DNA from: Podarcis muralis
Lineage: Eukaryota
Length of the DNA: 64,000 bases
Reading direction: 5' to 3'
NCBI RefSeq assembly: GCF_964188315.1
Contig: NC_135656.1
Coordinates: 111,166,001 to 111,230,000, forward strand
In this document: one piece after another, positions 13,684-58,987 of the stretch
How positions within the stretch are numbered: position 1 is the first letter of the stretch
Layout: every line of letters starts with the position of its first letter
Notes under the pieces: model-generated
What the model was told of the DNA's origin: nothing
Databases searched by the model: none
The model's input: only the letters and a program-made list of their open reading frames with translations
Position numbers and translations under genes: made by a program

Positions 13684-14180
13684 TTTATACCCCTCCCATC
13701 TGGCTGGGTTCCCCCAGCCACCCTGGGCGGCTCCCAAAAGAATATTAAAAGCACTATAAAACATCAAACATTAAAAACTTCCCAAAACAGGGCTGCCTCC
13801 AGATGTCTTCTAAAAGCCAGATAGTTGTTTATTTCCTTGACATCTGATGGGAGGGCGTTCCACAGGGCAGGCGCCACCACCGAGAAGGCCCTCTGCCTGC
13901 TTCCCTGTAGCTTCACTATTCGCAGGAAGGGAACCACCAGAAGGCCCTCGGAGCTGGACCTCAGTGTCCGCGCAGAACGATGGAGGAGGAGATGCTCCTT
14001 CGGGTATACTGGGCCGAGGCCGTTTAGGGCTTCAAAGTTCAGCACCAACACTTTGAATTGTGCTTGGAAACATACTGGGAGCCAATGTAGGTCTTTCAGG
14101 ACCAGTGTTATATGGTCTCGGCGGCCAGTCTAGCTGCCACATTCTGGATTAGTTGTAGTTTCCGGGTCACCTTCAAAGGG
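13684..14180 (-). mobile_element. L2-clade LINE 3' fragment
   Basis: ORF 13764-14051 (-) 'ALNGLGP.Y.KE.L…RAFSVVAPALWNALP' and the L2 3' UTR. Confidence 0.8.
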
Positions 14181-14227
14181 ATGAAGCACATTCTTGTGTG
14201 AGCCCAAGAAGCCCCTCTGTATAGAAC

Positions 14228-14474
14228 TGCTAAGTTGTGGGTGAACATATCAGAGGACACAGCGATTCTTCAAACAGCTCTTGTTTATTCACAGGCCAGG
14301 ACAGAACTGAACTGAAGGGTTCAGTCAGCCTGCTTATATAGAGCTCCAGTACAATGTAACTGTAACAATTTTCTAAAACTATCCAATCACTGAATGTCAT
14401 TTTCAATCCCTTATTTGCATAACTATCTACAGTATCCCCCTGCTGGCCCAGGGTGAGAACTTGAGTACATAACA
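14228..14474 (-). mobile_element. Solo LTR (247 bp)
   Basis: TG…CA termini, 5-bp TSD AGAAC, TATATAAG and AATAAA on the - strand. Same family as 21340-21597. Confidence 0.85.
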
Positions 14475-14647
14475 AGAACCAGGCTGTAGTCCCCTCCAGT
14501 CCTCTCTCTCTACTTCCCCCAAAAGTGCTGGCTACTTAAAAACCTTTTCAAACGACAGGTGCCACGCATTGAATCTATAAAGCATTAGAGGAATTACCAT
14601 TCTTTAACCTTTCTTTTCGCAAAACCATGTTTCCGTCCTGGTTACAG

Positions 14648-14757
14648 GGAGAAACGAGCGGAGCATTCAGCAGACCTTTCCACCTGGTTGGAGGAGAGAC
14701 TCAAGATCTGTTGTCAGAAAAATTCAACGCTAGTAAACGCTATGGTGAAATGTGCAG
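14648..14757 (+). CDS. TRIM-A linker exon (110 nt)
   Basis: gttacAG|G…GCAG|GTATTT, phase 2 to phase 1; EKRAEHSADLSTWLEERLKICCQKNSTLVNAMVKCA. The frame is continuous with the flanking exons. Confidence 0.8.
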
Positions 14758-14814
14758 GTATTTGGGGCAGCTTGGGAGTCGGGTGGGGAGAGGGAGGGAG
14801 AGAGGTTGAGCTCT

Positions 14815-15378
14815 CAAATATATTCCTGTGGAGGAAAGCGATCTAGGGCCCGGGATGGAATGTGCAACGGAAACATCCACCCGTCTGTGAAAAGGCAAAA
14901 TTCCTTGCCAGTGAAAGGCATAGAAACAAAAACATTGTGATGCCTTTCTGCAAATCGATGGTGCAAACCTGGGAGGTTCTGGAGAGGCTTAGCAACTGCA
15001 TTTTGGAAGATTGCTGTAGAGCTGGAAACATTGCAGTAAATATGATAGCCATGTTCAAATATATAAAAGGATGTCATATAGAGGAGGGAGAAAGGTTGTT
15101 TTCTGCTGCTCCAGAGAAGCGGACACGGAGCAATGGATCCAAACTACAAGAAAGAAGATTCCACCTAAACATTAGGAAGAACTTCCTGACAGTAAGAGCT
15201 GTTCGACAGTGGAATTTGCTGCCAAGGAGTGTGGTGGAGTCTCCTTCTTTGGAGGTCTTTAAGCAGAGGCTTGACAACCATATGTCAGGAGTGCTCTGAT
15301 GGTGTTTCCTGCTTGGCAGGGGGTTGGACTCGATGGCCCTTGTGGTCTATTCCAACTCTATGATTCTATGATTCTATG
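14815..15378 (+). mobile_element. CR1 LINE 3' fragment
   Basis: ORF 14862-15299 has the CR1 RT C-terminus (KYIKGCH.EEG..LFS…RTRSNG.KL…RF.LNIRKNFLTVR) and a (ttctatga)n tail. Confidence 0.9.
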
Positions 15379-15496
15379 AATTTTATTTTCAAAAAAATGA
15401 AATCTACATATATTTATTACATATTGATGAGCTCTTTGAGCGAATTTGTCATTTTTAAACCTAATGTTTCCTTCCTTCTCCCACCTCCTCAAACAG

Positions 15497-15523
15497 ATTC
15501 TCTGGAGGAAGCACTGAAGAAAG
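15497..15523 (+). CDS. TRIM-A 27-nt micro-exon (D-SLEEALKK)
   Basis: aaacAG|AT…AAAG|GTAATT, phase 1-1; paralogous to 49252-49278. Confidence 0.85.
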
Positions 15524-16323
15524 GTAATTTTGGGGGGACAGAATACCAAGGGATATTTTGATGGGATAAGTTGCCAGTAGGTCCGTCTGCTGACCACAGA
15601 AAGCCACCCACTTTAAAACTGTAGCACATCTAATGTAATTCTAATTTATGTGATGATCTTAATCGAGGTCAAGTTGACATATTGATATTTTGTACATTGC
15701 TGCTGCTTCTTGCTTGCTGGTGAGTCACACAAAGCAATAATCAACCTAAAAAAGCAAAACAACCCATGAAATACAGTACCTCATTTTTATATTTCAGAAG
15801 GTTTGAATAAATTTCTCACTCACACTACAGTGCCTCTGGAGCAAAAACTGGAGAAAGGTAATATTATGGAACTAAATGAGAACTAAATCTTGGTGGGAGA
15901 TGGTGCTTGGAAAAGAGTCAAAGAGCAGAACTGGTTTTATTCTGGGAATAAATTCAGTAAATTGAGTAAATAATAATTGTTTCTTAACTGTGCCTGACAT
16001 GCCATCCAAAAGTTAATTCATTCAGCATAGCCCTATATTTAAATGCCGATCTTAATCAGGGAAGTACTGTAACAGGGCTTTTTTTAAAAGAAGCAACCGC
16101 TGAAACATGTATGATTATTGTTTTATTCTATTGCTTCTTAAACGAGAACTGAATAAAAGTAAGTTCTAGAAGAATTAGATGGAAACACAAGCCCCCCAAT
16201 GAAAATAAGGACACCCAATGACACATAAAACATTAACCATAGTCGCTGAGAGCATGTCATTCAAATAAAAACTACCAAGTCTAACAAATGAGTAATTATT
16301 ATTATTATTATTATTATTATTAG

Positions 16324-16376
<53 letters not shown>

Positions 16377-16980
16377 AATTGAATTTATATACCGCCCTAT
16401 ACCTGGAGGTCTCAGGGCGGTTCACAAAAAAGATCACAATATATAAAATCAAAATAAAAAGAATAACCCAATAATGCCCCACCCCAAAAAAGAGCTACAT
16501 TTTAAAAGGGCATAGGATGTTGATGAAGTCAACCAAAGGCCTAGTTAAAAAGGAACATTTTTGCCTGGCACCTAAATGTGCATAATGAAGGCACCAGGCG
16601 GACTTCCCTGGGGAGAGCATTCCACAGATGGGGAGCCACTGCAGAAAAGGCCCCGTTCTCGTGTGATCCCCCTCCAAACCTCTTGAAGAGGAGGCACACG
16701 AAGGAGGGTCTCAGAAGATGATCTCAGGGTCTGGGTAGGTTCTTATGGAAAGAGGCGGTCCTTGAGGTATTGCGGTCCTGAGCCATTTAAAGCTTTATAG
16801 GTCAAAACCAGCACTTTGAAATGGGCCTGGAAACTAATTGGTAGCCAGTGCAGTCGGACCAGGATCGGTGTAATATGCTCAGACCGTCTTGCTCCGGTGA
16901 GCAACCTGGCCGCTGAATTCTGCACTATCTGAAGTTTCCAAACCGTCTTCAAAGGCATCTCTGCGTATAAGTATGTAAAT

Positions 16981-17482
16981 CATAGCTGTCAACCGTCCCT
17001 TATTTGGCGGGAAACTCCCTTATCCCAGTGCCGTGTCTTGCTGCTGTCCCTTATTGATGATGTCCCTTAAATTTCCTGGGTTTCATGCTCACCTGGCTCG
17101 GGAGGGAAGCAGCGGCTCGGGGTCCTCCGCCACAAGAGAGCACGCACGCTGGCACCGTCATCCTGGTGCAAGGAGTTCCATCGGCCCTTCCCCGCTGGAG
17201 AGAGGGGGGGAGGGAGAGAGACTCTCACCCACACCGCCCACAAGCCCAGAGGCAGTAGTGGTGGCGGCAGCTGAGGAGGCGGCCTGAGGGAGGATGGGGA
17301 GGGGATGGGGAGGGACGCAGAAGGGTGGCGCCGCAACAGCCTCATGCCGGATTGACAGCATCTGTCAATCCTACCAATGTATGTAACTCTTTACAACAGC
17401 AAAATCCCTTATTTTGGCTGCTGATCCCTTATTTTCGAGGCTGCTGGTCCCTTCTTTTCAAATCTGTAAGTTGACAGCTATG
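16981..17482. mobile_element. hAT-type MITE (TIR catagctgtcaac)
   Basis: TIRs catagctgtcaac…gttgacagctatg with an 8-bp TSD ATGTAAAT. Other copies at 37003-37190 (TSD GGCTGAGG) and 23235-24888 (interrupted by L1). Confidence 0.9.
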
Positions 17483-17653
17483 ATGTAAATATGTCTCTGA
17501 TTGGAAATGGGTAGAAACCACAGCTAAAGGTGGTGTTCCCAGGTGTAGCGGATGCGAAGGGATCGTTCCTTCTCACCTGCTTAGGGAGTGTACACTTGCT
17601 GGCCGGGAGATTTAAGCCCACGTTTATTTTCTCTTTCTCTGTGTGCCCTTCAG

Positions 17654-18210
17654 TGAGCGTGACTCTGGATCCTCTCACGGCACACCCTCTGCTCGCGCTG
17701 TCTGCCGATCTGAAGAGCGTGAAGGTTGGGGACGTGCCTGATGACCAGGCAGAGGACACGGACGAATTGCTCTCCATACCCTACGTGCTGGGCCGCGAGA
17801 AGTTCACGTCCGGGAGACATTGGTGGGAAGCCGAGCTGGATTTAAATGAAGAAGACAAGGAATACATGGATCAGGAGTGCTTGTGGATCGTAGGGGCGGC
17901 AAGAGAGTCCTTCCAGGGAAATAAAGGTTTCGACCTCAGCCCTAAAGCTGGGGTCTGGGCTGTGGGGGTGAGCCCCTTTTCCAAAAAGCTCACTGCTTTC
18001 ATTTCCCGCAAGCCAAGCCATTCGCACTTGGCGCATCAGGTGAGGAAGATCCGAGTATCCCTGGATTACAAAGCACGCCAGGTGGAGTTTTTTGATGCCG
18101 ATACAGATGCCTCCATTTTCACTTTTTCGGCAGCTTCGTTCGCTGGGGAGGCCATTCGTCCCTTTTTTTGTCTGGGGGGAGAAGGACTTGAATTGAAGTG
18201 TGGGAACTGA
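17654..18210 (+). CDS. TRIM-A terminal exon: PRY/SPRY (B30.2) domain 1
   Basis: Phase-1 acceptor cccttcAG|TG; VTLDPLTAHPLL…VLGREKFTSGRHWWE…KIRVSLDY…VEFFDAD…IRPFF; stop TGA at 18208-18210. The joined model with both RING exons is 591 aa. Confidence 0.92.
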
Positions 18211-23532: not shown

Positions 23533-24670
23533 TTTTTTTTTTTTTTTGCTTCATAATTTTTATTGATTTGCATATTAAAAAGATATAAAACATAAAAGCT
23601 ACATTCTCATTTTCACAGATTGTTTGGTACGACTTCCTTCAACCTTTCCACAAATCATCCATAATATCCTTATAAGAATCCGCATTTCTTAATTTGTATT
23701 GTCATTATCCATCCTGGTTCTTCTCTTTCTCTTTGACAGTACCCTTTTCTTTTTACAGAGCTCCTTTAAAACCCACTAGTGTTATCTGTCCTTCACTCAA
23801 GTTTTCCAGATAATTCGTAAAGTTTTCCCACTCCTTAATGAACCTCTGGTCTTTGGAATATCTAATTTTCCCTGTCATCTTATCCATCTCCGTGTAATCT
23901 AACAGTTTTGCTCTCCATTCTTCGATTGTCGGCAAATTCTCAGATTTCCAATTTTGAGCTAATAAGATTCTTGCAGCCGATGTTGCATACTGGAAAAACT
24001 TATAATCTTTCTTTTTTATCTCCCTTCCTACCAATCCCAACAAAAAAGCCTCAGGTTTTTTAACAAAAGTATATCTTAAAATCTTTTTCATTTCGTTATA
24101 CACCCCCTCCCAGAACCCTTTAACTTTTTGACACTCCCACCACATGTGAAAAAAGGACCCCTCCCTTTCTCTACACTTCCAACATTTGTTACAGGTCCCG
24201 TACATTTTGGCTAATTTTACAGGAGTTAAATACCAACGGTAAAACATTTTCATTAGATTCTCCTTTAGTGTCACACAAGCTGTAAACTTAAGGTGTGTTT
24301 TCCAGAGTTTCTCCCACTCTTCAGCATATATATTATGGCCGATGTCTCTCGCCCAATGTATCGCTACCGATTTTACTTCTTCATCTATTAAATTCCAGTC
24401 TAGTAGCTGGTTATACATTTTAGACAAAATTCTATAGTTGTTGTTCAATATTTCAGTCTGGAATCTAGAGTCTTTGTCGGCGTATCCTTTATCTGTAATA
24501 TCTTTCTTAAACATTCCATTTAACTGAAAGTAATGCAGCCAGTCATATACTTTCTCCTTAATCTGATCGTACGGCTTTAATTTCCACTTCCCTTCTTCTT
24601 TCGTTAACAGTTGCTCGTATGTGGGCCAGTTATCTCTCGTATTTATCTTTTTGACACTCATCACTTCTAG
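23533..24670 (-). mobile_element. 5'-truncated L1-clade LINE (ORF2 C-terminus, 3' UTR, poly-A)
   Basis: ORF 23753-24664 carries 'KMFYRWYLTP.KL..MY…CWKC…GSFFHMWWEC', the L1 C-terminal Cys/His knuckle. Poly-T on the + strand from about 23533. TSD tcgttcttagactcc at 23518-23532 / 24682-24696. Confidence 0.9.
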
Positions 24671-25105
24671 CGGCGATAGACTCGTTCTTAGACTCCTTAT
24701 TGGGTGAGCAACGCAGCCAAGCGTTGGAGCCTCCCTCCTCCCTGGCCGGCAGGGAAGGAGGGAGGGAGAGGAGCTGCTTCCTTTGAAACTCGGGGAATTT
24801 AAGGGACATCATCAATAAGGGACAGCAGCGGGACACAGCGCTGGGATAAGGGACTCTCCCGCCAAATAAGGGACGGTTGACAGCTATGCTTTAGGGATGC
24901 TACCACAGGCAAGCCCAAGCGAAGCCTCCCACACAACATGCAAGTTTCTCCTTCATTCTTGGGGCGCTGGGGTGAGGTGGGGTGAAGTTTACTGGCCCTC
25001 CTGAAGCCTGGCCAAAATGAGGTTTGGGGGAGTTGTGGTCCGGCAGCCGAGAAACTGGTCCTTTTCCTTGACCCATGCAATTCTCTCTCTCTCTGCCCTG
25101 CACAG

Positions 25106-25647
25106 TGAATGTGACTTTGTACCCAGACACGGCGCACCCCAACCTCATCCTGTCCGAGGATCTGAAGTACGTCCAATGGGGAGACAGGCGCCAGGACCTG
25201 CCCGACAACCCCGAGAGATTCGACAAGGAGATGTTTGTCCTGGGCCGCGAGAGATTCACTTCTGGGCGGCATTGGTGGGACGTGGAGGTCGGAGGGGAAT
25301 GGGCCGAGTGGGCGGTTGGTGTGGCGCGAGAGTCTGTCAGGAGGAAGGGGGACGTCACCCTTAACCCTAGCGAGGGGTTCTGGGCTCTGCAGAAGACCAT
25401 GGTGGACACTTTTGGGTCCTTCTCCGATTGGCAGCTCTCAGCTTCGACTTCCCCTAAGCTGACCGTCGTGTACGCCAGAAGCGAGCTCAGGAAGATCCGA
25501 GTATCCCTACACTACGAAGAGGGCCTCGTGGAGTTTTTCGACGGCGACACCAACAACTCAATCTTCGCTTTCCCCTCAGCTTCCTTCTCTGGGGAGAGGA
25601 TCTGCCCGTTTTTCCACCTGAAGTGGGGAGGCAAGCTGAAATGTTGA
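25106..25647 (+). CDS. Second PRY/SPRY (B30.2) terminal exon; alternative last exon of TRIM-A or an orphan exon
   Basis: Strong pyrimidine tract and phase-1 acceptor ctgcacAG|TG; VTLYPDTAHPNLILSED…LPDNPERFD…GRHWWDVEV…KIRVSL.YEEG.VEFFD…ICPFF; open to TGA. No RING or coiled-coil exons were found between 18210 and 25106. Confidence 0.8.
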
Positions 25648-28923: not shown

Positions 28924-29128
28924 TACTAGATTAGATGAGCCTTTAAACTATTTATTTATATACATGGAGGGCTCTTTCCATGCCCATGGGTCTCAGGGGG
29001 GAGCTGCTACTACCAGCCCAGCATAAAATGCCCCCCTCTGCCCCCAACTCAGACATAAAGACACTTGACCATCCCACTCTGGGTTTCAAGATCGCTGAGA
29101 GGCAGAAAAACTATTAGATAAAGCAAAC

Positions 29129-29134
29129 TTTATT
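29129..29134 (-). terminator. Candidate poly(A) signal of the LRR gene
   Basis: AATAAA on the - strand about 72 nt past the stop codon at 29207. Confidence 0.55.
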
Positions 29135-29206
29135 AACAGAGACCCTGTCTTGGCCCCAACACAAGAGGAGCAGCCGTCTTCGGCAACAGCAGAAACAGCA
29201 GGCTTT

Positions 29207-30520
29207 TCACTCCCAGGAAATCTCCATGTCCAAACCCTCACTCCTGACTCTCCTGAGGAATTCGTCATAGTCTGCCCTGAAGATGCGTGAGCAAGCCGGC
29301 ACATCGATGAAGCTCAGCTGGTTTTCCGAGGACAACAGCAGGTGGATGGTGCTTCCGGACACCCTGGTTTCCATCAAGGAGAGCTTCTGGAGGTGAGTCA
29401 GGGCTGTGGCCGGCGGCTCCAGCACCTGCTCAAACACGCTGTCCAGGGAGAAAGGCAGGCAAGCCAGCAGCAAGCTTTCGAGTTGCGGCGAATGTCTCAG
29501 CAGGGACACAAGGCATGCTCTGAACACGGCTTTGTGCTGGGAAGGAAGGGGGCCTTCTGAGTCAGGGTACATCAGGAAAATGTACCGGAGGTGGGGGAAT
29601 TGATGAGGCGCGGGGCTGAAATTTTCCTCCAAGTCTTCAATCATTTCCTCGTCGTCATCGTCGTCATTGTCATCAGGGGCACACACTGCTGGAGGAGGGA
29701 GGTTAGCCACCAATTTCCGGAGGTTCAGGCAGTGGCCCAGGAAGGTCCAGAAGGAAGAGGCATCTTCGCAGAGAAAGCCACTCAATGAAAGAGAGTGGAG
29801 CTGTGGTCCGAGGGCGGCTGCCATCGGCAGAAGATCAGCAACATCGCACTGGCTGTCGTTGTCAAGGGTCAGGCAGGAGATGTGGCGCCACGGTGCAAAG
29901 TCCTGGCCAAAGCCCCCAGGGTTGCCTTCGAGAATCAGAGTCACGTCGGCCAAGTGCGGGCACACGGCTAAAACGGCGGGCAGGCAGCTCAGTGCCACAT
30001 CGTCCAATTCTGTGAGGGTCAGCGTGAGCCCGTGGCCGCTATGGGCGGACATCCTGCGTCTCGCCAGCTCCTCCAGCGAGGGGAACTCGGGGGCGACTGG
30101 GACGTTGTTGAACTGCCGCCTGTAGATCGCGCACACAGCCTCCAGAACGAAAGGGTGGTCCAAGATCTTCAGGCTCCGCAAGGCCAGGAGCAGAAAGACC
30201 AAGTGCTGAACCATGCATTGGAGGAGAGGTCTACCCATCAGGTATCTGGCTCTGAGCACCTTCAAGGCCGGCGAGCGGAGCGAGCCCGTGGCAGGGTCGT
30301 AGGCCAAGTGGAGGAGGCACTCTGGAGAAAGCCTGCTGCAATCGACAACATCCAGTTCAAGTAGCTGCCGGCAGTGGGAGCCCACGGCAGCAAGCACCTG
30401 GGCATTGCACTGGGTGTCCGACAGGTTGAGTTGGGCGAGGCTCGGCAAAGCTTTCACCAGGTCGACGAGGGAGTCTGCGGGGATCCGGCAGCAGCCTCTG
30501 ATATCCAGGGAGGACAGGTT
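29207..30520 (-). CDS. LRR gene, last coding exon (437 aa of cysteine-type leucine-rich repeats)
   Basis: Phase-0 acceptor ctttccctgacatggcAG|AAC, extending ORF 29207-30457 by NLSSLDIRGCCRIPADSLVDL. Repeats such as LxxLDIRGCCRI, LLELDVVDCSRL, LHSLSLSGF, LQKLSLMETRV. Open to the stop. Confidence 0.88.
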   Translation of the reverse strand, partial: NLSSLDIRGCCRIPADSLVDLVKALPSLAQLNLSDTQCNAQVLAAVGSHCRQLLELDVVDCSRLSPECLLHLAYDPATGSLRSPALKVLRARYLMGRPLLQCMVQHLVFLLLALRSLKILDHPFVLEAVCAIYRRQFNNVPVAPEFPSLEELARRRMSAHSGHGLTLTLTELDDVALSCLPAVLAVCPHLADVTLILEGNPGGFGQDFAPWRHISCLTLDNDSQCDVADLLPMAAALGPQLHSLSLSGFLCEDASSFWTFLGHCLNLRKLVANLPPPAVCAPDDNDDDDDEEMIEDLEENFSPAPHQFPHLRYIFLMYPDSEGPLPSQHKAVFRACLVSLLRHSPQLESLLLACLPFSLDSVFEQVLEPPATALTHLQKLSLMETRVSGSTIHLLLSSENQLSFIDVPACSRIFRADYDEFLRRVRSEGLDMEISWE

Positions 30521-30829
30521 CTGCCATGTCAGGGAAAGAGAAAGGGAAAGGTTTGTTTTTGCTCACGTGCAACAGCGTTTGCAGACCTCCAGATTCGCCG
30601 GACTACAAATCCCATCAGCCGCAGCCAGCACAGAGGCGTATGGGGCAGCACCAAGTTGGCAGAAGTCNNNNNNNNNNNNNNNNNNNNNNNNNNNNNNNNN
30701 NNNNNNNNNNNNNNNNNNNNNNNNNNNNNNNNNNNNNNNNNNNNNNNNNNNNNNNNNNNNNNNNNNNNNNNNNNNNNNNNNNNNNNNNNNNNNNNNNNNN
30801 NNNNNNNNNNNNNNTCTGGCTGAGTTTCT

Positions 30830-31640
30830 CCAGCCACTCTGGGCGGCTCCCAATCAAGTATTAAAAACTTTACAGCGTTAAATATTAAAAACTTCCCTGA
30901 ACAGGGCTGCCTTCAGATGTATTTTAAAGATAGGATAGCTACTTATTTCCTTCACATCTGAAGGCAGGGTATTCCACAGGGTGGGCACCACTACCGAGAA
31001 GGCCCTCTGTCTGGTTCCCTGTAACCTCACTTCTCGCAATGAGGGAACCGCCAGAAGGCCCTCGGAGCTGGATCTCAGTGTCCGGGCTGAACGATGGGGG
31101 TGGAGACACTCCTTCAGGTATACAGGACCGAGGCTGTTTGGGGCTTTTAAGGTCAGCACCAACACTTTGAATTGTGCTCAGAAATGTACTGGGAGCCAAT
31201 GCAGGTCTCTCAAGACCGGAGTTACATGGTCTCAGCGGCTGCTCCCAGTCACCAGTCTAGCTGCCGCATTCTGGCTTAGTTGTCGTTTCTGGGTCACCTT
31301 TAAAGGTAGCCCCACATAGAGCGCATTGCAGTATCCAAGCGGGAGATAACTAGAGCATGCACCACTCTGGCGAGACAATCCGTGGGCAGGTAGGGTCTCA
31401 GCTTGCCTACCAGATGGAGCTGGTAAACAGCTGCCCTGGACACAGACTTGACCTGCGCCTCCGTGGGCAGCTGCAAGTCCAAAATGACTCCCAGGCTGCG
31501 CACCTGGTCTTTCAGGAGCACAGTTGCCCCATTCAGGACCAGAGTTTCCCCTCACCTGCCCACCCCCTGTCCCCCCAAAAAACAGTACTTCTGTCTTGTC
31601 AGGATTCAACCTCAATCTGTTAACCGCCACCCATCCTCAA
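30830..31640 (-). mobile_element. L2-clade LINE fragment (intron of the LRR gene)
   Basis: ORFs with 'LRLNPDKTEVL', 'QVRSLGVILD…LVISRLD', 'RQRAFSVV.P.LWN.LP'. Further copies at about 32480-32760 (+) and 32760-33490 (-). Confidence 0.85.
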
Positions 31641-32186
31641 ACCACTTCCAAACACTCACACAAAATAGAGAGAACTAATTGACAAATAGTGGAAACCAGG
31701 CCGCTTGGAAAGGGTGCTTCATCCTTCGGCAAGAACTTGAACTGAGTCGATTGCTGTGTTGTTACCTGTTTTGACTTTCTTAAAAAGGAGTGAAGTTGAG
31801 ACCAGGCCAACCATGGAAAGAGGACATCCCCAAATTTCTCTTTCACTGCAGGGACCAGTAAGGAACTCTGCATATCAAGTTTCCGCAAACCATTGTTTCT
31901 TAGAGTGCCATTCCTCCACGTTAAGAGCCCTGTGCTTGTTGTAAACATGGGATAAAGGAAGGCGTATCAAGTGAGCTAAGCCGCCAGCAGCAAAGCGCAG
32001 GTGCAGGTGCGAGCAAGACTCCCGCAGGGCAGATCCACAGGTGTCTCAAGCACACAACTCAAGCTAAGAATCCAGGAGGAGCCCTGCACAGACAGGCCAG
32101 GAGGCGACAAGAGAGGAGTCCCCATTTTAGAGGAAGGAGCTCCCCCCAGGAACCAAGTCAGAGCACAAAGCATGCACACCCCTTAC

Positions 32187-32353
32187 CTTGCAACGCACTG
32201 CGATGATGTCGGCAACGGCCTTGATGACCAGCCTCGGGCACACGTTCAAGCTCAGCACCGTCAGCTGCGGCACCAGGAGGAAGCGCAGGACCGGTCGGTT
32301 CAAGCGATTGCCTTCCTCCATTAACTTGAACAGCTTCTGGACAAGGGAGTCAG
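32187..32353 (-). CDS. LRR gene, coding exon 2 (end of Cul2-box and first LRR)
   Basis: Acceptor cctccccacccAG|CT (phase 1), donor AAG|GTAAGG (phase 0); (P)DSLVQKLFKLMEEGNRLNRPVLRFLLVPQLTVLSLNVCPRLVIKAVADIIAVRCK. Confidence 0.85.
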
Positions 32354-32707
32354 CTGGGTGGGGAGGAAATACCCAGATATAAACACAAAGCTTTGCACAA
32401 CAATTAGACACATGCTTTCCTCAGGTGATTAGGAGCTAGAAGCAAACCAGAAGGTGCAGAGGGTAACAGGGAAAGTTCCCCTGGCTATAGGGAACCAGGC
32501 AGAGGGCCTTCTCGGTAGTGGCACCCGCCCTGTGGAACGCCCTCCCACCAGATGTCAAGGAAACAAACAACTATCCGATTTTTAGAAGACATTTGAAGGC
32601 AGCTCTGTTTAGGGAAGTTTGTAATGACTAATGTTTTAACGTATTTTTAATATTTGGTTGGAAGCCGCCCAGAGTGGCTGGGGAAACCCAGCCAGATGGG
32701 CAGGGTA

Positions 32708-32758
<51 letters not shown>

Positions 32759-33875
32759 TATCATTTATACCCCGCCCATCTGGCTGGGTTTCCCCACCCA
32801 CTCTGGGCAGCTTCCAACAAAATGTTAAAATACAATAGTCCGTCAAACATTAAAGGCTTCCCTAAACAGGGCTGCCTTCAGATGTCTTTTAAAGATAAGA
32901 TAGCTGCTTATTTCCTTCACATCTGATGGGAGGGCATTCCACAGGGCGGGCACCTCTGGCTGGTTTCCTGCAACCTCACTTCTCACAAGGAGGGAACCAC
33001 CAGAAGGCCCTGGACCTCAGTGTCTGGGCTGAATGATGAGGGTGGAGACGCTCCTTCAGGTATACTGGACTGAGGCCGTTTAGGGCTTTTAATGTCAGCA
33101 CCAACACTTTGAATTGTGCTTGGAAACATACTGGGAGCCAATGCAGGTCTTTCAAGACTGGTGTTATGTGGTCTCAGTGGCCACTCACAGTCACCAGTCT
33201 AGCTGCTGCAATCTGGATTAGTTGTAGTTTCCGGTTTACCTTCAAAGGTAGCCTCACATAGAGCGCATTGCAGTAGTCCAAGCGAGAGATAACCAGAGCA
33301 TGCACCACTCTGGCGAGACAGTCCGCGGGCAGGTAGGGTCTCAGCCTGCGTACCAAAAGGAGCTGGTAGACAGCTGCCCTGGACACAGAATTGACCTGCC
33401 CCTCCATGAGCAGCTGTGGGTCCAAAATGACTCCCAGGCTGCACACCTGGTCCTTCAGGGGCACAGTTACCCCATTCCGGATCAGGGAGTGCTCCACACC
33501 TGCGCGCCTCCTGGGGAACTTTGCTCTGGACCACAACTCCCATCATCTCTGACTACAGGCCGTGCTGGCTGGGGCCCATGGGAATTGGAGTCCAACAGCA
33601 GCTGGACGGCCACCAGCTCCCCAGCTCTGCCTTAAGAGATGGAGCCTTCCTACCTAGGCAGCTTTTCTAGCCAGGTGAGCTTGAGAACCAGTTTTTACAG
33701 GACCACCTGCATAAGATGCTACAAGGCTCAGAGATGCAAATTGCAGGAGGCTACAAGACGCCCGCCCCCCGAAATAATTCGCCCGATTGCCTTTTTGAAA
33801 TGCAATCTGTGGCTTGGCCATGGGGTCTTTGTGGCCGGTCTCTCCTTTGCCTCCCATGTGCCGTGTCCCTCTTAC

Positions 33876-34026
33876 GCAGGCAGATGTAGGGCTCTGCAAC
33901 AGAGCGAACGAGGTGTCCATCCTGGTGGTTTTCTGCACAAACTTTGGCCCAGATGCGCTGGATATTTTTAGCCACATTCTCCAGGCACAGCCATTCCAGT
34001 GAGCGGACCGTTCTCCTCTTGGGCAT
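33876..34026 (-). CDS. LRR gene, coding exon 1 (start codon, BC-box)
   Basis: ATG at 34026 preceded by a pyrimidine tract and a CAGCAG acceptor (so the 5' UTR is spliced). MPKRRTVRSLEWLCLENVAKNI…EPYICL; donor C|GTAAGA, phase 1, matching exon 2. Total protein 543 aa. Confidence 0.8.
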
Positions 34027-34174
34027 GGAGCTGCTGGAGACAGAAGCATGAGAGAAGGGTGAGAGGGGAAAGCTAGGCCTTTGCAAGGTAGGTTTTCAAG
34101 TCAAAACTGTAAACACCACGACTGATCTGTTAAGATCCTGCCAAGGACTCTTTGCTTTCTTGATTACAGTGGTA

Positions 34175-34941
34175 CAGTGGTGCCCCGCAAGACGAACGCC
34201 TCGCAAGACGGAAAACCCGCTAGACGAAAGGGTTTTCTGTTTTGGAGGCGCTTCGCAAAACGAATTTCCCTATGGGCTTCCTTCGCAAGACGAAAGCCCA
34301 TAGGGAAATCTCCGGGACAGCGGGGAAGCGCAGCGCATCTTCCCCACTGTCCTCGGACCTCCTCCGAAGGCTGGCGGCGGGCGGAGAGACCTCCTCCCGC
34401 CGCCAGCCTTCGTTTCTCCGCTATCCCGGACGGCTTTTGAAGGCAGGCGGGGGGGGAGCAAAGACTTTCGCCCCCCGCCGGCCTTCAGAAGAGGTCCAAG
34501 ACCTCTTCTGAAGGCCGGCGGGGGGCAAAAGTCTTTGCTCCCCCCTGCCTGCCTTCCTGGGGGCTTTTAAATCGCCCCGGGACAGCGGAGAAGTACTCCG
34601 CTGTCCCGGGGTTTTTTAAAATGCTGGCGGGCGGCAGCGGAGGCTTCGCTGCCGCCCGCCAGCATTTTAAGATCGCCCCGGGACAGCGGAGAAGTCTCCG
34701 TCCCGGGGTTTTTTAAAATGCTGGGGGTGGGAAGAAAAGCCCTTGTCCCCCCCCCCCCCCAGCCTTCAGAAGAGGTCAGGGGACAGACTGTCCCCGGACC
34801 TGGTCTGAAGGCGGTTTCCATAGGAACGCATTGATTGATTTTCAATGCATTCCTATGGGAAACCGTGCTTCGTAAGACGAAAAACTCGCAAGAAGAAAAA
34901 ACTTGCGGAACGAATTAATTTTGTCTTGCGAGGCACCACTG
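34175..34941. mobile_element. Tc1/mariner-type MITE with internal inverted repeats
   Basis: TIR cagtggtgccccgcaagac / gtcttgcgaggcaccactg, TA flanks, internal hairpin at about 34440-34556. Confidence 0.8.
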
Positions 34942-39800: not shown

Positions 39801-42756
39801 GGCCCCATTAGCTAAAGTGGTACCTCAGGTTAAGAACAGTTTCAGGTTAAGAATGGACCTCCAAAACGAATTAAGTTCTTAACCCGAGGTACCACTGTAG
39901 TTGGCTCCGAAGAGCGCCCCTCCCCCGCTGGTTCCCTGCCACGGAAAGGAGCCCAAAGATAATCTCTAGCCTAACCTCCTGCCATGCAGTTATCTCAACT
40001 AAAGCATCCATGACCGTCCAACAACATCTGCTTAAAAACCTCCAAGGAAGGAGAGGCCAAGAACTCCCCCCTACCACTATTGCCCCTCCTATTTGCCCCA
40101 GCTACACCCCCCTCCCGTTACCCACACACACACACCGCCCCACAGCCTTAGAGGCAGATCAGCCTCCCTTGCCTACAGATCACAACTTGCAGCCTCCACC
40201 GAAACCACGTGGCGGCCGAGAACCAAAACAATGCAGCGGCTGCGGAGGAGGAGGCGAGGTGGGCGGGGCCCTTCCCATGCTCTGCACCTCCAAGCCACGC
40301 CCCTCATTGACCACGCCCCTTTCGCTCGCTCACAAAAACAAGGCTGGCTGAAGATGCACATCAAAGCTTACAGTTCTTGTGAGCTCCAACATCAGCAGAA
40401 GTCAGGCACGGTGTGCACGCTGTGCCTTAAGGGGTGTGTTTGTGTGTGCGATGTTCTGGTTTTCTTATCTATATCCAATCAAGTTCTGCCCCCCCCTCAT
40501 GAGAACTTTTGTTATTATTATTTAAGCAACTAATCAGGGCCATCTTAAGCATATCCGGCGCCGTGGTGCAAAGATCCCACCGGTGGCGCCCCCCCCCAAT
40601 TTCCCAGAGTTGTTGACCTTTTTAAGGGGGGGACCCCAAAGTTGTTGACCTTTTGTAGGAAAGGCTCCCCAGAGTTGTTGACCTGAAATTGGGAATTCCA
40701 CAGATTTCACTACAGGGAAGGAGAGGCAAGATCTGGGGGTGAGGGGAACCTACAACCCTTCCTTTACTGGATGAAAAGAGAGAGATAAAGTGGGACAGAG
40801 GAANNNNNNNNNNNNNNNNNNNNNNNNNNNNNNNNNNNNNNNNNNNNNNNNNNNNNNNNNNNNNNNNNNNNNNNNNNNNNNNNNNNNNNNNNNNNNNNNN
40901 NNNNNNNNNNNNNNNNNNNNNNNNNNNNNNNNNNNNNNATTAAACATACTTTTACATCTTATTCAATTTTTTTGACTTCCATCAGTCCTGTCTGAAAATT
41001 TCCCAATCTAATCTCTCAGTATGCATTTCTTAGCTTCCCTATTACATTTCAAACTCATAACCAATATCTCTATCTTTTTCTACTTTGTAACGCTTTGTAT
41101 ATTTCTCCTTACAAAACTTTTTGTAGTCCCACTAGCGTAATTTGTTGATTACAGTTGCTCTTCAAATAATTCATATACTTCTTCCAATCTTCTGTAAATC
41201 TCTGGTCCTGCAGGTTTCGAATCCTTCCTGTCATCATGGGAGCTGGGCATGTTTAGCCTGGAGAAGAGGAGGTTAAGGGGTGATATGATTCCACCTAAAC
41301 ATTAGGAAGAACTTCCTGACAGTAAGAGCTGTTTGACAGTGGAATTTGCTGCCAAGGAGTGTGGTGGAGTCTCCTTCTTTGGAGGTCTTTAAGCAGAGGT
41401 TTGACAACCATATGTCAGGAGTGCTCTGATGGTGTTTCCTGCTTGGCAGGGGGTTGGACTCGATGGCCCTTGTGGTCTATTCCAACTCTATGATACTGGT
41501 ACCTCGGGGGTTTTTAACACAAACACACACGCCAACCCCGGTTGCTCCCTGATCCCCTCAAAGTGAGTGGGTGTGGTGGGACAGCAGCAGATTGTCCTCG
41601 CCCACAACCACACATGCAGGTGTGCATGTGCAGTCCACTGCATTTCGCAACGCTACATAAGGGAGAAATAAAAATGCACTTGGGAAGCCGCCGCTCTGAA
41701 AAGGAAGAGACGGGGTCCTTGCTTGCTGGTGGGGAGCTCTGACAGGGAGCTGCTGAGAGAGACTCCAGCATCCTCTTCGAAACCATTCTTTGGGGCTCCC
41801 CTCCCGTGCTCCTGCCATGCACAGGAGGCGTGGGAAGCAAGCTGGACACCGGGGCGTGCAGGGAAAGGGGAGGCCACCGGCAAAGCTGCGCAGCTCCCCC
41901 ACTCGCTGGGGCGCCCCTGAGATGTCTGTGCCGTGGCACAACGCGCCACTAAGCCCTGTGGGAAAGGCGGCTCTGCAACTAATGTGGAAATGTAGAGAAC
42001 TGAGTTTAAGGCTGGAAAAATGACAACGTGAACTCAAAAAGGACAAATTGGCTCACCCTTAAGAACCAAGCAACACCTGCATTTAGAGCACAGTGGCCCT
42101 TGATTCTCTCACCGCTGCTGTTTTGTTGTTCTTGTCCTTCTGTTTAGCTAATACAGTGGTACCTCGGGTTAAGAACATATTTCGTTCTTAACCTGAAACT
42201 GTTCTTAACCTGAGATACCACTTTAGCTAATGGGGCCTCCCCCGCCGCTGTGCGATTTCTGTTCTCATCCTGAGGTAAAGTTCTTAACCAATGGTACTAT
42301 TTCTGGGTTATTGGAGTCTGTAACCTGAAACATCTGTAACCTGAAACGTCTGTAACCCGAGGTACCAATATAAAACTAAATTGAAAGGGTTTTTTTTAAA
42401 TATATATATATATATACAGAGAAGGGGAGCACCACTTCCCTCTTTCTTGAGACAGGGGTCTGACGCTTTTGTTAAGGAAGTAAGAAAGGGATTGTGAGAA
42501 ACTCTCTCAACTCCTCAGCAGCGGCGGGGAAGGACAGAGTTGTTTATCCGTTAAAAGGAGGAAGGAGAAGGAACATAACAGAAACCAAAAGGAGCTATTG
42601 CCTCTCCCCAATTCATTATTAAAAATAGATGTGGAGAGCACAATAAGGGCAAGGCTTAATCCATTGTTATCCTCAGTGGGGCTCTTGTATGCCCCAGAGC
42701 TTGCCCTCCCTTGAAGTAGAAGCAGGAGAGTAAACACCTTGGCAGTAACAGGAATC

Positions 42757-42769
42757 AGAAAACGAAACC
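42757..42769 (+). promoter_or_regulatory. ISRE/IRF-E-like motif AGAAAACGAAACC upstream of the TRIM-C ATG
   Basis: Matches GAAANNGAAAC; about 32 nt before the ATG at 42802. Confidence 0.4.
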
Positions 42770-42801
42770 AAGGCTGTCGTTTCGCCCAGGGAGAGGCAGA
42801 C

Positions 42802-43194
42802 ATGGCAGCAGGAATGCCTGAGAAGCAGCTTCTCGAAGAAGTGACTTGCTCCATCTGCCTGGACTATTTCGAAGATCCAGTGACTACAAACTGTGGGCAC
42901 AATTTCTGCCGAGCCTGCCTGAGAGATGGGCTGGAGAAGAACCCTTTTTGCCCTCAGTGCAGAGCAGCCTTGAAGCCACGGCAATTCAAGCCCAACAGGA
43001 AACTGGCAAACATGGTCGAAATAATCAGGAAAATTGAGGAGGGGAAAAACGCTAACCTGTGTAAGGGGGACCAGGAACCCTGCAAACTCTTCTGCAAGGA
43101 TGACCAGGTCCTCATATGCGTGATCTGCAACCTATCCAAGGAGCACCGAGATCATCAGGTCGTCCCTGTGCAGGAGGCTGCCCAGGAGTATAAG
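42802..43194 (+). CDS. TRIM-C exon 1: RING (C3HC4) plus B-box2 (TRIM39/TRIM27-like class IV TRIM)
   Basis: gacATGg; EEVTCSICLDYFEDPVTTNCGHNFCRAC…CPQC; B-box CKGD…CKDD…CVIC…HRDH; donor aag|GTAGGG. Confidence 0.92.
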
Positions 43195-44039
43195 GTAGGG
43201 AATTGCCACTGTTTGGGGGTCCAGATGGATAGAGCAGGAGGAGACACAATAGATGAGTCTGAAATGGTACATGGTGTGGAGAGCACTGCTGTTCTTTTAT
43301 TTAAGCCAGCACTAGGCAGAAGGTGGGACGCGGGTGGCGCTGTGGGTTAAACCACAGAGCCTAGGACTTGCCGATCAGAATGTCGGGGGTGAGCTCCCAT
43401 TGCTTGATCCCTGCTCCTGCCAACCTAGCAGTTCGAAAGCACGTCAAAGTGCAAGTAGATAAATAGGTACCACTCCGGCGGGAAGGTAAACAGCGTTTCC
43501 GTGCGCTGCTCTGGTTTGCCAGAAGCGGCTTAGTCACGCTGGACACATGACCCGGAAGCTGTACGCTGGCTCCCTCGGCCAGTAAAGCGTGAGCGCCGCA
43601 ACCCCAGAGTCGGCCACAACTGGACCTAATGGTCAGGGGTCCCTTTACCTTTACAGGCAGAAGGTAGTTTGGGATCTGCTGGTGGAACTGTAGGTGATTT
43701 GCAATAGGTTAGAAAGGCCTCTTGATTCCCAAATGTTTAATAATAATAGCACAATTGTAGTTAAGCGGCATATAAAGTGTTTAAGTGTTTAAATAAACGA
43801 AAGACCTACAATCTAAGTATGCAAAATAGAGGTGGGGTCATGTAGCGAATCACAAGAGGATTGTGTCGGTGGTGGTGTTGTCGTTGTTGTCGCCCCGGCA
43901 GCCAAAACCAGGAAGCTTTGAAATTAAGAGCTGGGCCTCATCTACAGTCCATCGGATCAGACTTGGCTTTATAAGGAACTCAGTTGGGGGAAACTGGACT
44001 GGCTGACTAAGCAAAAGTCTTTTTTTTCTGTTTGTGCAG

Positions 44040-58186: not shown

Positions 58187-58987
58187 TGTTGTTGTTTAGT
58201 CATTTAGTCGTGTCCGACTCTTCGTGACCCCATGGACCAGAGCACACCAGGCATTCCTGTCTTCCACTGCCTCCCACAGTTTGGTCAAACTCATGCTGGT
58301 AGCTTTGAGAACACTGTCCAACCATCTCGTCCTCTGTCGTCCCCTTCTCCTTGTGCCCTCCATCTTTCCCAACACCAGGGTCTTTTCCAGGGAGTCTTCT
58401 CTTCTCATGAGGTGGCCAAAGTATTGGAGCCTCAGCTTCAGGATCTGTCCTTCCAGTGAGCACTCAGGGCTGATTTCCTTAAGAATGGAGAGGTTTGATC
58501 TTCTTGCAGTCCATGGGACTCTCAAGAGTCTCCTCCAGCACCATAATTCAAAAGCATTAATTCTTCGGCGATCAGCCTTCTTTATGGTCCAGCTCTCACT
58601 TCCATACATCACTACTGGGAAAACCAGAGCTTTAACTATACGGACCTTTGTTGGCAAGGTGATGTCTCTGCTTTTTAAGATGCTGTCTAGGTTTGTCATT
58701 CCTTTCCTCCCAAGAAGCAGGCGTCTTTTAATTTCGGGACTGCTGTCACCATCTGCAGTGATCATGGAGCCCAAGAAAGTAAAATCTCTCACTGCCTCCA
58801 TTTCTTCCCCTTCTATTTGCCAGGAGGTGATGGGCCCAGTGGCCTTGATCTTTGTTTTTTTGATGTTGAGCTTCAGACCATATTTTGCGCTCTCGTCTTT
58901 CATCCTCATTAAAAGGTTCTTTAATTCCTCCTCACTTTCTGCCATCAAGGTTGTGTCATCCGCATATCTGAGGTTGTTGATATTCCT
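58187..58987 (-). mobile_element. BovB (RTE-clade) LINE, 5'-truncated
   Basis: RT C-terminus NINNLRYADDTTLMAESEEELK…GTRRRGRQRTRWLD and a (caa)n tail. Shorter copies at about 60153-60493, 59850-59925 and 10437-10510. Confidence 0.93.

What the first reader, a model, noticed from the sequence alone, without database searches (positions are those of the whole stretch)
29207..34026. Unnamed BC-box/Cul2-box/LRR gene: candidate Cullin-2 E3 substrate receptor inside a TRIM cluster
Seen: three - strand exons with matching phases join into a 543-aa ORF. The N-terminus has S-L-E-W-L-C-L-E-N-V, an exact fit to the Elongin-C BC-box (S/T/P)LxxxCxxx(I/L/V). About 31 residues later comes L-P-D-S-L-V-Q-K-L, fitting the Cul2-box phi-P-x-x-phi-x-x-x-phi. 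That box spans the exon 1/2 junction, so the ORF track does not show it. Roughly a dozen cysteine-type LRRs follow, with an acidic loop (DDNDDDDDEEMIEDLEE). Established: BC-box plus Cul2-box plus LRR is the architecture of CRL2 receptors such as ZYG11/ZER1, PRAME/LRRC14 and LRR1. Inference: I do not recognise this as any of those genes. It may be a new CRL2 adaptor family, sitting antisense among RING E3 ligases, which would put two ubiquitin-ligase systems in one immune-type locus.
Basis: partly seen in the sequence, partly recalled or inferred. Interest (0 to 1): 0.82.

Follow-up and report, generated by a model that had tools for sequence, protein, structure and literature searches.

The report
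RAD7-like Elongin-box LRR gene
This is a real three-exon wall-lizard gene, already annotated but unstudied, from an old animal family absent from every mammal hit; its front end matches the Elongin-C-binding box of yeast RAD7, so it probably picks targets for a ubiquitin ligase.

Summary
Three minus-strand exons with GT/AG borders join into a 543-aa ORF. It is identical to NCBI's 'uncharacterized protein LOC114592044 [Podarcis muralis]'. The N gap lies inside intron 2 and touches no codon. One RNA contig joins exon 2 to exon 3 exactly.

The BC box (S9-L10...C14...V18) is almost invariant in 37 tetrapod relatives and is kept in fish, amphioxus and invertebrates. A profile of the N-terminus hits one solved protein over that region: yeast RAD7 crystallised with Elc1 (E 5.9e-15). 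L10 and C14 fall on Rad7 L168 and C172, the residues changed in the Rad7 SOCS-box mutant. The three best structural matches of the N-terminal model are ZYG11B-ElonginB/C (two entries) and CRL2-APPBP2, but all at a weak Z of 5.0. None of 37 members has an F-box.

The Cul2-box proline is not family-wide. It is Ala in most tetrapods and Pro in fish, amphioxus and arthropods. Which cullin is used stays open.

The gene is not ZYG11, ZER1, PRAME or LRR1. It belongs to an unnamed metazoan family (zebrafish-style name si:ch211-214j8.12). No mammal appears among the hits. The window copy is a fast-evolving squamate paralogue. Its pairing with a TRIM exon is shared with Rhineura. Binding is untested.

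The parts
33876..34026 (-). Coding exon 1 (residues 1-50 plus the first base of codon 51). The start MPKRR is conserved family-wide.
   Evidence: An X2 RNA contig covers 33889-34035.
33973..34002 (-). BC box SLEWLCLENV (residues 9-18), at the start of predicted helix 10-33.
   Evidence: L10 is kept in 36/37, C14 in 35/37 and position 18 is V/L/I in 35/37. It aligns to Rad7 L168/C172 (PMC4551923).
32354..33875 (-). Intron 1 (GT..AG), mostly retroposon fragments.
   Evidence: Very high repeat-derived read depth.
32187..32353 (-). Coding exon 2 (rest of codon 51 to residue 106): the Cullin-box-like helix and the first LRR turn.
   Evidence: The exon 2/3 boundary is conserved in Rhineura and the P. 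lilfordi paralogue.
32331..32353 (-). Main part of the Cul2-box-like motif LPDSLVQKL (residues 50-58). L50 and the first base of P51 lie in exon 1 at 33876-33879.
   Evidence: Pro is present in only 3 of 37 tetrapod members, but also in fish, amphioxus and arthropods. Predicted helix 52-64.
30521..32186 (-). Intron 2 (GT..AG), which contains the assembly gap.
   Evidence: An RNA contig of X1 joins 32187 to 30520.
30668..30814 (.). Assembly gap (N), wholly intronic.
29207..30520 (-). Coding exon 3 (residues 107-543 plus the TGA stop): the bulk of the cysteine-type LRR solenoid.
   Evidence: AF2 pLDDT 86.5, about 16 strand-helix turns. LRR matches to FBXL2, FBXL17 and RAD7.
29624..29674 (-). Acidic loop DDNDDDDDEEMIEDLEE (residues 389-405). 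It is variable in relatives and modelled with low confidence.
   Evidence: RNA contigs show variant letters at 29666-29680.
29129..29134 (-). AATAAA, the likely poly(A) signal, 73 nt after the stop.
   Evidence: Read directly; not tested.
25075..25647 (+). Neighbouring TRIM PRY-SPRY exon, tail to tail with the gene. This pairing is shared with Rhineura.
   Evidence: Pfam PRY 6e-21 and SPRY 3.5e-13. It is 80% identical to an exon about 2 kb from the Rhineura orthologue.
42739..43350 (+). RING/B-box exon of the next TRIM gene, on the gene's 5' side.
   Evidence: Pfam RING 4.5e-12, B-box 5e-9.

Best explanation
The gene encodes a RAD7-like substrate receptor of an Elongin-C-based cullin-RING ubiquitin ligase.

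The proposed mechanism has three inferred steps:
1. The N-terminal amphipathic helix carrying the BC box (S9, L10, C14, V18) docks into Elongin C.
2. The next helices (52-64 and 70-76), which carry LPDSLVQKL, face the cullin. Cul2 is the best guess from the motif, but this is unproven.
3. The roughly 16-turn cysteine-type LRR solenoid (residues about 78-543) binds the protein to be ubiquitinated.

Shown here: the gene model, conservation of the box, its homology to the Rad7 SOCS box, the absence of an F-box, and the LRR fold. Inferred: Elongin C binding, the choice of cullin, and ligase activity. The substrate is unknown.

The window copy belongs to a squamate-specific, faster-evolving paralogue group. 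In Lacertoidea it sits tail to tail with a TRIM gene. That fits a shifting, perhaps pathogen-related, target, but this is speculation.
For: Gene model and identity. The exon 2/3 junction is seen in RNA.

BC box conservation:
- In 37 tetrapod members L10 is kept in 36, C14 in 35, L15 in 35 and W26 in 35.
- The box is also kept in teleosts, amphioxus (Ser for Cys, which the consensus allows), crinoids, molluscs, a damselfly and shrimp.
- It fits the consensus (S,T,P)Lxxx(C,S,A)xxx-phi given in PMC4878042.

Homology to RAD7:
- Profiles of the N-terminus hit 5zb2_A, 'Crystal structure of Rad7 and Elc1 complex', at E 1.6e-8 and E 5.9e-15 with a wider profile.
- The match runs collinearly from position 5 to 128. 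It is the only PDB hit that covers the first 70 positions.
- L10 and C14 align with Rad7 L168 and C172, the two residues replaced in the Rad7 SOCS-box mutant. That mutant strain fails to ubiquitinate Rad4 after UV (PMC4551923).

Fold of the N-terminal 112 residues:
- Without Foldseek, the best 3 of 48,161 chains are ZYG11B-EloB/C (9bid_A, 9lk2_A) and CRL2-APPBP2 (8jal_A), each aligned from its own N-terminus.
- Swiss-Prot models rank AMN1, rhp7, PRAME, RAD7 and LRRC14B among the top matches, interleaved with F-box/LRR proteins.

Other points: there is no F-box Pfam hit in any of 37 members at E up to 1. The full model is confident (pLDDT 86.5, pTM 0.83) and is an LRR solenoid behind N-terminal helices.
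Against: - No binding data exist for any family member.
- The structural matches of the N-terminus are weak (Z 5.0; Foldseek E above 1). The tool itself warns that such values can reflect a common helical arrangement.
- The window protein alone hits RAD7 only at E 0.1.
- The Cul2-box proline is Ala in 31 of 37 tetrapod members.
- Rad7 acts with Cul3, not Cul2.
- The motif pair arises by chance in 2.5% of shuffles.
- A conserved N-terminal helix could also be only a cap for the LRR solenoid.
- Expression is low, and the exon 1/2 junction was not seen in reads.
Confidence: 0.62

Rival explanations
1. It is an SCF-type F-box/LRR receptor that binds SKP1-CUL1, as the automatic names of relatives suggest (FBXL15-like, FBXL2, FBXL6, 'F-box domain-containing').
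For: The LRRs are most like FBXL2 and FBXL17. Some database names say F-box. F-box and BC-box modules are related in shape, and SKP2 appears among the weak N-terminal fold hits.
Against: No F-box family (PF00646 or PF12937) is hit in any of 37 members at E up to 1. All FBXL and SKP2 sequence matches start at profile position 69 or later, that is, in the LRRs only. The N-terminus matches the Rad7 SOCS box instead.
Confidence: 0.08
2. It is an LRR binding protein with no ligase role, for instance an inhibitor or scaffold like ribonuclease inhibitor or AMN1. The conserved N-terminal helices would only cap the solenoid.
For: Ribonuclease inhibitor matches the solenoid nearly as well as FBXL2 does (Z 17.8 against 18.7). 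AMN1 is the best Swiss-Prot match of the N-terminal model, and I found no paper linking AMN1 to Elongin C. The BC-box pattern is frequent in Leu-rich sequence.
Against: The exact BC-box residues (Leu, Cys, hydrophobic) are held from invertebrates to birds. They align with residues that Rad7 needs for ligase function. A cap alone would not need a conserved Cys at that position.
Confidence: 0.2
3. The window copy is a decaying or non-functional duplicate. The conserved A paralogue would do the work, and this B copy would be drifting inside a TRIM cluster.
For: The B copy evolves about twice as fast. Podarcis and Zootoca are 75.6% identical in B against 88.4% in A, and the B branches are longer. 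RNA depth is very low, and zero in two bulk RNA runs.
Against: The ORF is intact. Near full-length B-clade proteins are on record for Zootoca (542 aa) and Rhineura (540 aa); the Lacerta entry is shorter (466 aa). The window protein keeps all 35 invariant family columns. Splice sites are canonical. One spliced RNA contig exists.
Confidence: 0.1

Closest known systems
Yeast RAD7 (S. pombe Rhp7): the SOCS-box LRR subunit of the Rad7-Rad16-Elc1-Cul3 GG-NER E3 ligase
   Same: It is the only characterised protein with significant sequence similarity to the N-terminal box. The PDB hit 5zb2_A scores E 5.9e-15 and is collinear over about 120 residues. L10 and C14 equal Rad7 L168 and C172. In both, the box is followed directly by cysteine-type LRRs to the C-terminus. 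Rhp7 and RAD7 also appear among the fold matches.
   Different: Rad7 has about 160 extra N-terminal residues, whereas here the box starts at residue 9. Similarity beyond about residue 140 was not detected by sequence. Orthology is untested. No Rad16-like partner or DNA-repair role is shown. Animals pair Elongin B/C with Cul2 or Cul5 (PMC4878042), not Cul3.
VHL-box CRL2 receptors with repeats: ZYG11B/ZER1, APPBP2, PRAME/LRRC14, LRR1
   Same: The architecture is the same: a BC box, then a phi-P-x-x-phi-x-x-x-phi helix, then a repeat domain. The N-terminal model's three best solved matches are ZYG11B-EloBC (two entries) and CRL2-APPBP2. PRAME and LRRC14B are among the Swiss-Prot matches. Eighteen of 37 members touch Pfam LRR_Zer-1.
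   Different: There is no significant sequence match to any of them. There are no ARM repeats as in ZYG11/ZER1. The structural Z is only 5.0. The Cul2-box Pro is missing in most tetrapod members.
AMN1 homolog (258 aa, mammals to yeast)
   Same: It is the best Swiss-Prot structural match of the N-terminal 112 residues (TM 0.56, 23-25% identity, aligned 1-112 to 1-91). It also has cysteine-type LRRs.
   Different: It is half the length. The E-value is only 0.07. No Elongin C link was found in the literature searched.
FBXL F-box/LRR proteins (FBXL2, FBXL17, SKP2)
   Same: They give the closest LRR sequence and fold matches.
   Different: There is no F-box, and the matches do not cover the N-terminal 70 residues.

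Membership tests
Elongin BC-box (VHL-box/SOCS-box) cullin-RING substrate receptors | BC box (S,T,P)Lxxx(C,S,A)xxx-phi near a helix start | tested here: met
   SLEWLCLENV at residues 9-18, at the start of predicted helix 10-33. The consensus comes from PMC4878042.
Elongin BC-box (VHL-box/SOCS-box) cullin-RING substrate receptors | The BC box is conserved in homologues | tested here: met
   L10 36/37, C14 35/37, position 18 V/L/I 35/37. It is kept in fish, amphioxus and invertebrates.
Elongin BC-box (VHL-box/SOCS-box) cullin-RING substrate receptors | Physical binding to Elongin B/C | not testable with these tools
   Needs co-IP or a complex prediction with ELOB/ELOC. Only indirect support exists: homology to Elc1-bound Rad7.
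CRL2 receptors (VHL box) | Cul2 box phi-P-x-x-phi-x-x-x-phi downstream of the BC box | tested here: inconclusive
   LPDSLVQKL is present in the window protein. Pro is found in only 3 of 37 tetrapod members and Ala in 31. Pro is present in teleosts, amphioxus, a damselfly, shrimp and Nucella.
CRL2 receptors (VHL box) | N-terminal fold like that of solved EloBC-bound receptors | tested here: inconclusive
   The top 3 of 48,161 chains are ZYG11B-EloBC (two entries) and CRL2-APPBP2, but at Z 5.0. Foldseek was not significant.
CRL2 receptors (VHL box) | Binding to CUL2-RBX1 | not testable with these tools
RAD7/Rhp7 | Significant sequence homology that includes the SOCS box residues | tested here: met
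   5zb2_A at E 1.6e-8 and 5.9e-15. L10/C14 correspond to L168/C172.
RAD7/Rhp7 | Orthology (reciprocal best match or a tree with fungal and plant RAD7, AMN1 and FBXL) | not tested
RAD7/Rhp7 | Long N-terminal extension before the box, and partnership with Rad16 | tested here: not met
   The box starts at residue 9 in most members. Only the extension was tested; a Rad16 partner could not be tested.
F-box/LRR (FBXL) | An F-box domain N-terminal to the LRRs | tested here: not met
   No F-box Pfam family is hit in any of 37 members at E up to 1.
ZYG11/ZER1 | C-terminal ARM-like repeats and sequence similarity | tested here: not met
   The whole C-terminus is LRR. No ZYG11B hit appears in the PDB sequence searches, although ZYG11B chains are in the library.
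PRAME/LRRC14 | Sequence similarity to the PRAME family | tested here: inconclusive
   No named PRAME/LRRC14 protein appears among the hits. Whether PRAME chains are in the PDB copy was not checked. There is only a weak N-terminal fold match (E 0.36).

The most novel reading that the evidence does not exclude
This family is the animal counterpart of yeast and plant RAD7. Non-mammalian animals, from invertebrates to birds, would then keep a Rad7-type Elongin-C ligase receptor that mammals have lost. In squamates a duplicate was freed, expanded in tandem in Anolis and Varanus (several copies also in Phrynosoma), and in Lacertoidea became locked next to a TRIM gene, perhaps as a paired immune or antiviral ubiquitin-ligase module.
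Probability: 0.2. Interest if true: 0.75.

Novelty: new member of a known kind. Interest (0 to 1): 0.55.

Why it matters
Elongin-BC receptors are a short, well-counted list drawn mostly from mammals and worms. This points to an old and widespread but wholly uncharacterised LRR family with a conserved BC box. It appears to have been overlooked because no mammal carries it in the searches run here.

Its only characterised relative, yeast RAD7, is usually described as having no animal equivalent. If the family binds Elongin C, it adds a receptor to the cullin-RING repertoire of fish, amphibians, reptiles and birds. It also gives a testable link to Rad7-type biology.

The squamate duplicate evolves fast, forms tandem arrays, and in lacertids and amphisbaenians sits paired with a TRIM gene. 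That makes it a candidate for lineage-specific, possibly immune, substrate targeting.

Tried and rejected
- F-box reading: rejected. No F-box Pfam hit in 37 members.
- Membership of ZYG11/ZER1, PRAME/LRRC14 or LRR1: rejected for lack of any sequence match and for lack of ARM repeats.
- Whole-model fold searches gave only generic LRR solenoids (FBXL2, ribonuclease inhibitor, TLR8, TIR1). They do not discriminate.
- Foldseek on the N-terminal model alone: nothing significant.
- Exon 1/2 junction in reads: not found. Two bulk RNA runs had no reads on the exons.
- TRIM linkage as a family trait: rejected. There is no TRIM exon within 10 kb of the A paralogue (P. lilfordi), or of the Phrynosoma, Motacilla, Anolis or Varanus copies. 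Only Rhineura shares it.
- A missing exon in the N gap: rejected.
- Literature: no paper holds the zebrafish-style symbol ch211-214j8.12. None links AMN1 with Elongin C or Elc1.
- A second copy in the window: none.
- dN/dS was not attempted. At 52% protein identity to the only orthologous DNA in hand (Rhineura), synonymous sites would be saturated.

Full report
**1. The observation**

Reading the minus strand of 29000-34300 and joining 34026-33876, 32353-32187 and 30520-29207 gives 1632 nt, in frame, with a single terminal stop and 543 codons. Each intron begins with GT and ends with AG, behind a pyrimidine-rich tract.

The BC box SLEWLCLENV is residues 9-18. LPDSLVQKL is residues 50-58, and the Pro-51 codon is split by intron 1. 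The acidic run is residues 389-405.

The assembly gap 30668-30814 lies wholly inside intron 2, 148 nt upstream of the exon-3 acceptor. No coding letter depends on it. I did not try to fill it.

A search of the large protein collection with exon 3 returned a 543-aa protein identical to the spliced product: 'uncharacterized protein LOC114592044 [Podarcis muralis]'.

**2. RNA evidence**

Reads and contigs of four RNA runs were laid on 29100-34100.
- One contig of run X1 joins 30520 to 32187, skipping 1666 nt with ends CT..AC on the + strand. That is the exon 2/3 splice, and it spans the gap-bearing intron.
- Exon 3 is covered at depth 2-7 in X1 and X2.
- An X2 contig covers 33889-34035 of exon 1.
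- The exon 1/2 junction was not seen.
- Two bulk RNA runs had no reads on the exons, so expression is low in what was sampled.
- The very high depths inside the introns come from retroposon copies, not from this gene.

**3. The family**

An alignment of 37 full-length relatives (A1) has 53% mean column identity. L10, C14, L15 and W26 are each kept in at least 35 of 37. In contrast, Pro-51 is present in only three members: the window gene and its Zootoca and Rhineura orthologues. It is Ala in 31.

A full HMMER scan of 1.84 billion representatives with A1 found 89 proteins below 1e-30. The ones that carry names come from many groups:
- sharks, bichirs, gar and teleosts (where the name is 'si:ch211-214j8.12')
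- a lungfish, frogs and amphioxus
- crinoids, an annelid, a nemertean, bivalves, a gastropod and octopus
- a damselfly, shrimp and an ostracod

All are 'uncharacterized' or carry automatic FBXL-like names.

A second search with the slow-evolving tuatara member listed 120 proteins from reptiles, birds, amphibians, coelacanth, sharks and rays. None came from a mammal. Given how densely mammals are sampled, this fits loss in mammals, but it is not proof.

The Cul2-box position is Pro in teleosts, amphioxus, the damselfly, shrimp and Nucella. It is Thr or Ser in some invertebrates and Ala in most tetrapods.

**4. What the N-terminus is**

Pfam finds only LRR families. No F-box is hit in any of the 37 members even at E up to 1. 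Eighteen members touch LRR_Zer-1.

Profile searches of all PDB sequences gave these results:
- The full-length profile matches FBXL2 and FBXL17 through the LRRs only. It matches RAD7 (5zb2_A, 'Crystal structure of Rad7 and Elc1 complex') over profile positions 5-140.
- The N-terminal profile A2 gives RAD7 as the only significant hit (E 1.6e-8, positions 5-92).
- The wider profile A3 raises the RAD7 hit to E 5.9e-15 over positions 5-128. Every other hit starts at position 69 or later.

In the printed alignment, the family's L10 and C14 sit on the Leu and Cys of Rad7 'SLQSLC'. These are chain positions 8 and 12, which correspond to L168 and C172 with the construct's offset of 160. A paper on the Rad7 E3 ligase states that the Rad7 SOCS-box mutant carries L168A and C172A, and that the mutant strain fails to ubiquitinate Rad4 (PMC4551923).

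The window protein alone gives the same alignment, but only at E 0.1.

**5. Structure**

AlphaFold2 with A1 gave a confident model (pLDDT 86.5, pTM 0.83). It has helices 10-33, 52-64 and 70-76, a low-confidence loop at 33-45, and then about 16 strand-helix turns.

Whole-model searches return LRR solenoids of every kind: FBXL2 at Z 18.7, ribonuclease inhibitor at 17.8 and Rad7 at 15.8. They say little about function.

The N-terminal 112 residues were modelled alone (pLDDT 74.8).
- Foldseek gave no significant match.
- The Foldseek-independent scan of 48,161 chains ranked ZYG11B-ElonginB/C (9bid_A, 9lk2_A) and CRL2-APPBP2 (8jal_A) first to third. Each is aligned from its own N-terminus, all at Z 5.0.
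- Against Swiss-Prot models, AMN1 ranks first (E 0.07, TM 0.56) and rhp7 (TM 0.62) next. PRAME, RAD7 and LRRC14B also appear among the top 26, interleaved with F-box/LRR proteins.

Each value is weak. The recurrence of Elongin-C partners at the top is suggestive, not proof.

**6. Chance**

In 20,000 shuffles of the protein, a relaxed BC box within the first 40 residues followed by a Cul2 box 10-70 residues later occurs in 2.5%. The motifs alone would not carry the claim. Conservation and the RAD7 homology do.

**7. History and neighbourhood**

A maximum-likelihood tree of 48 members places the window gene with Lacerta, Zootoca and Rhineura in a 'B' clade. That clade also holds two Varanus copies and the multi-copy iguanian sets (Anolis, Pogona, Phrynosoma, Sceloporus).

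A separate 'A' set holds one slower copy per species, among them lacertids, Rhineura, Elgaria, a Sceloporus copy and snakes. The split comes after geckos. Support for the B clade is 91 (SH-aLRT), and some forks are unresolved.

The B copy diverges about twice as fast. Podarcis and Zootoca are 75.6% identical in B against 88.4% in A. Podarcis and Rhineura are 53.7% identical in B against 68.7% in A.

In the window the gene lies antisense between TRIM genes. A PRY-SPRY exon at 25075-25647 and RING/B-box exons at 42739 and 57632 are confirmed by Pfam. The Rhineura B orthologue has a PRY-SPRY exon 80% identical to 25075-25647, tail to tail about 2 kb away, so this pairing is shared across Lacertoidea.

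The A copy of P. lilfordi, a Phrynosoma copy, the Motacilla gene, and the Anolis and Varanus arrays show no TRIM exon within 10 kb. Anolis and Varanus carry tandem arrays of the family itself.

**8. Verdict**

The reading 'BC-box LRR receptor of an Elongin-based ligase' is the best-supported explanation (about 0.6).

The specific claims of Cul2 and of a brand-new gene are not established. The gene is annotated, and the family is old and widespread but unstudied. Its nearest characterised relative is yeast RAD7, not ZYG11, PRAME or LRR1. Which cullin it uses, what it targets, and whether it is a true RAD7 orthologue remain open.

Noticed in passing
window 30815-31630 and 32440-33540 (introns 2 and 1): Retroposon fragments inside both introns draw very high depth in RNA contigs (up to about 40,000), with many loose ends and cross-joints. 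This is an abundantly transcribed repeat family, not part of the gene. The assembly gap abuts one copy.
   Followed up: partly
window 29666-29680 and 29913: RNA contigs of X1/X2 carry four letter differences around the start of the acidic loop and a 3-nt deletion at 29913 within exon 3. These may be allelic variants of this fast-evolving gene, or come from another individual.
   Followed up: no
window 34033-34040: An AG acceptor sits just upstream of the ATG (tctccag|cagctccATG). An X2 contig fits up to 34035 and leaves 30 of its letters off this stretch, at an end the table does not specify. This hints at a separate 5' UTR exon further upstream.
   Followed up: no
window 17530-18210 and 25075-25647: Two PRY-SPRY exons lie on the + strand behind one TRIM body (Pfam-confirmed). 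The second exon is the one conserved next to the Rhineura orthologue.
   Followed up: partly
L005 (Anolis carolinensis) 1-33388 and L006 (Varanus komodoensis) 1-28109: The family forms tandem arrays. Anolis has at least three full-length copies plus several exon-3 fragments within 33 kb. Varanus has three copies, one of them inverted.
   Followed up: partly
window 58196-59338 (-) and 23753-24664 (-): Long ORFs of 380 and 303 aa look like retrotransposon proteins (reverse-transcriptase-like and LINE ORF2-like tails), lying inside the TRIM cluster.
   Followed up: no
L003 (Motacilla alba) 13882-17152: In this bird the family's single copy sits next to a short-chain dehydrogenase gene near a chromosome end, not next to TRIM genes.
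   Followed up: no
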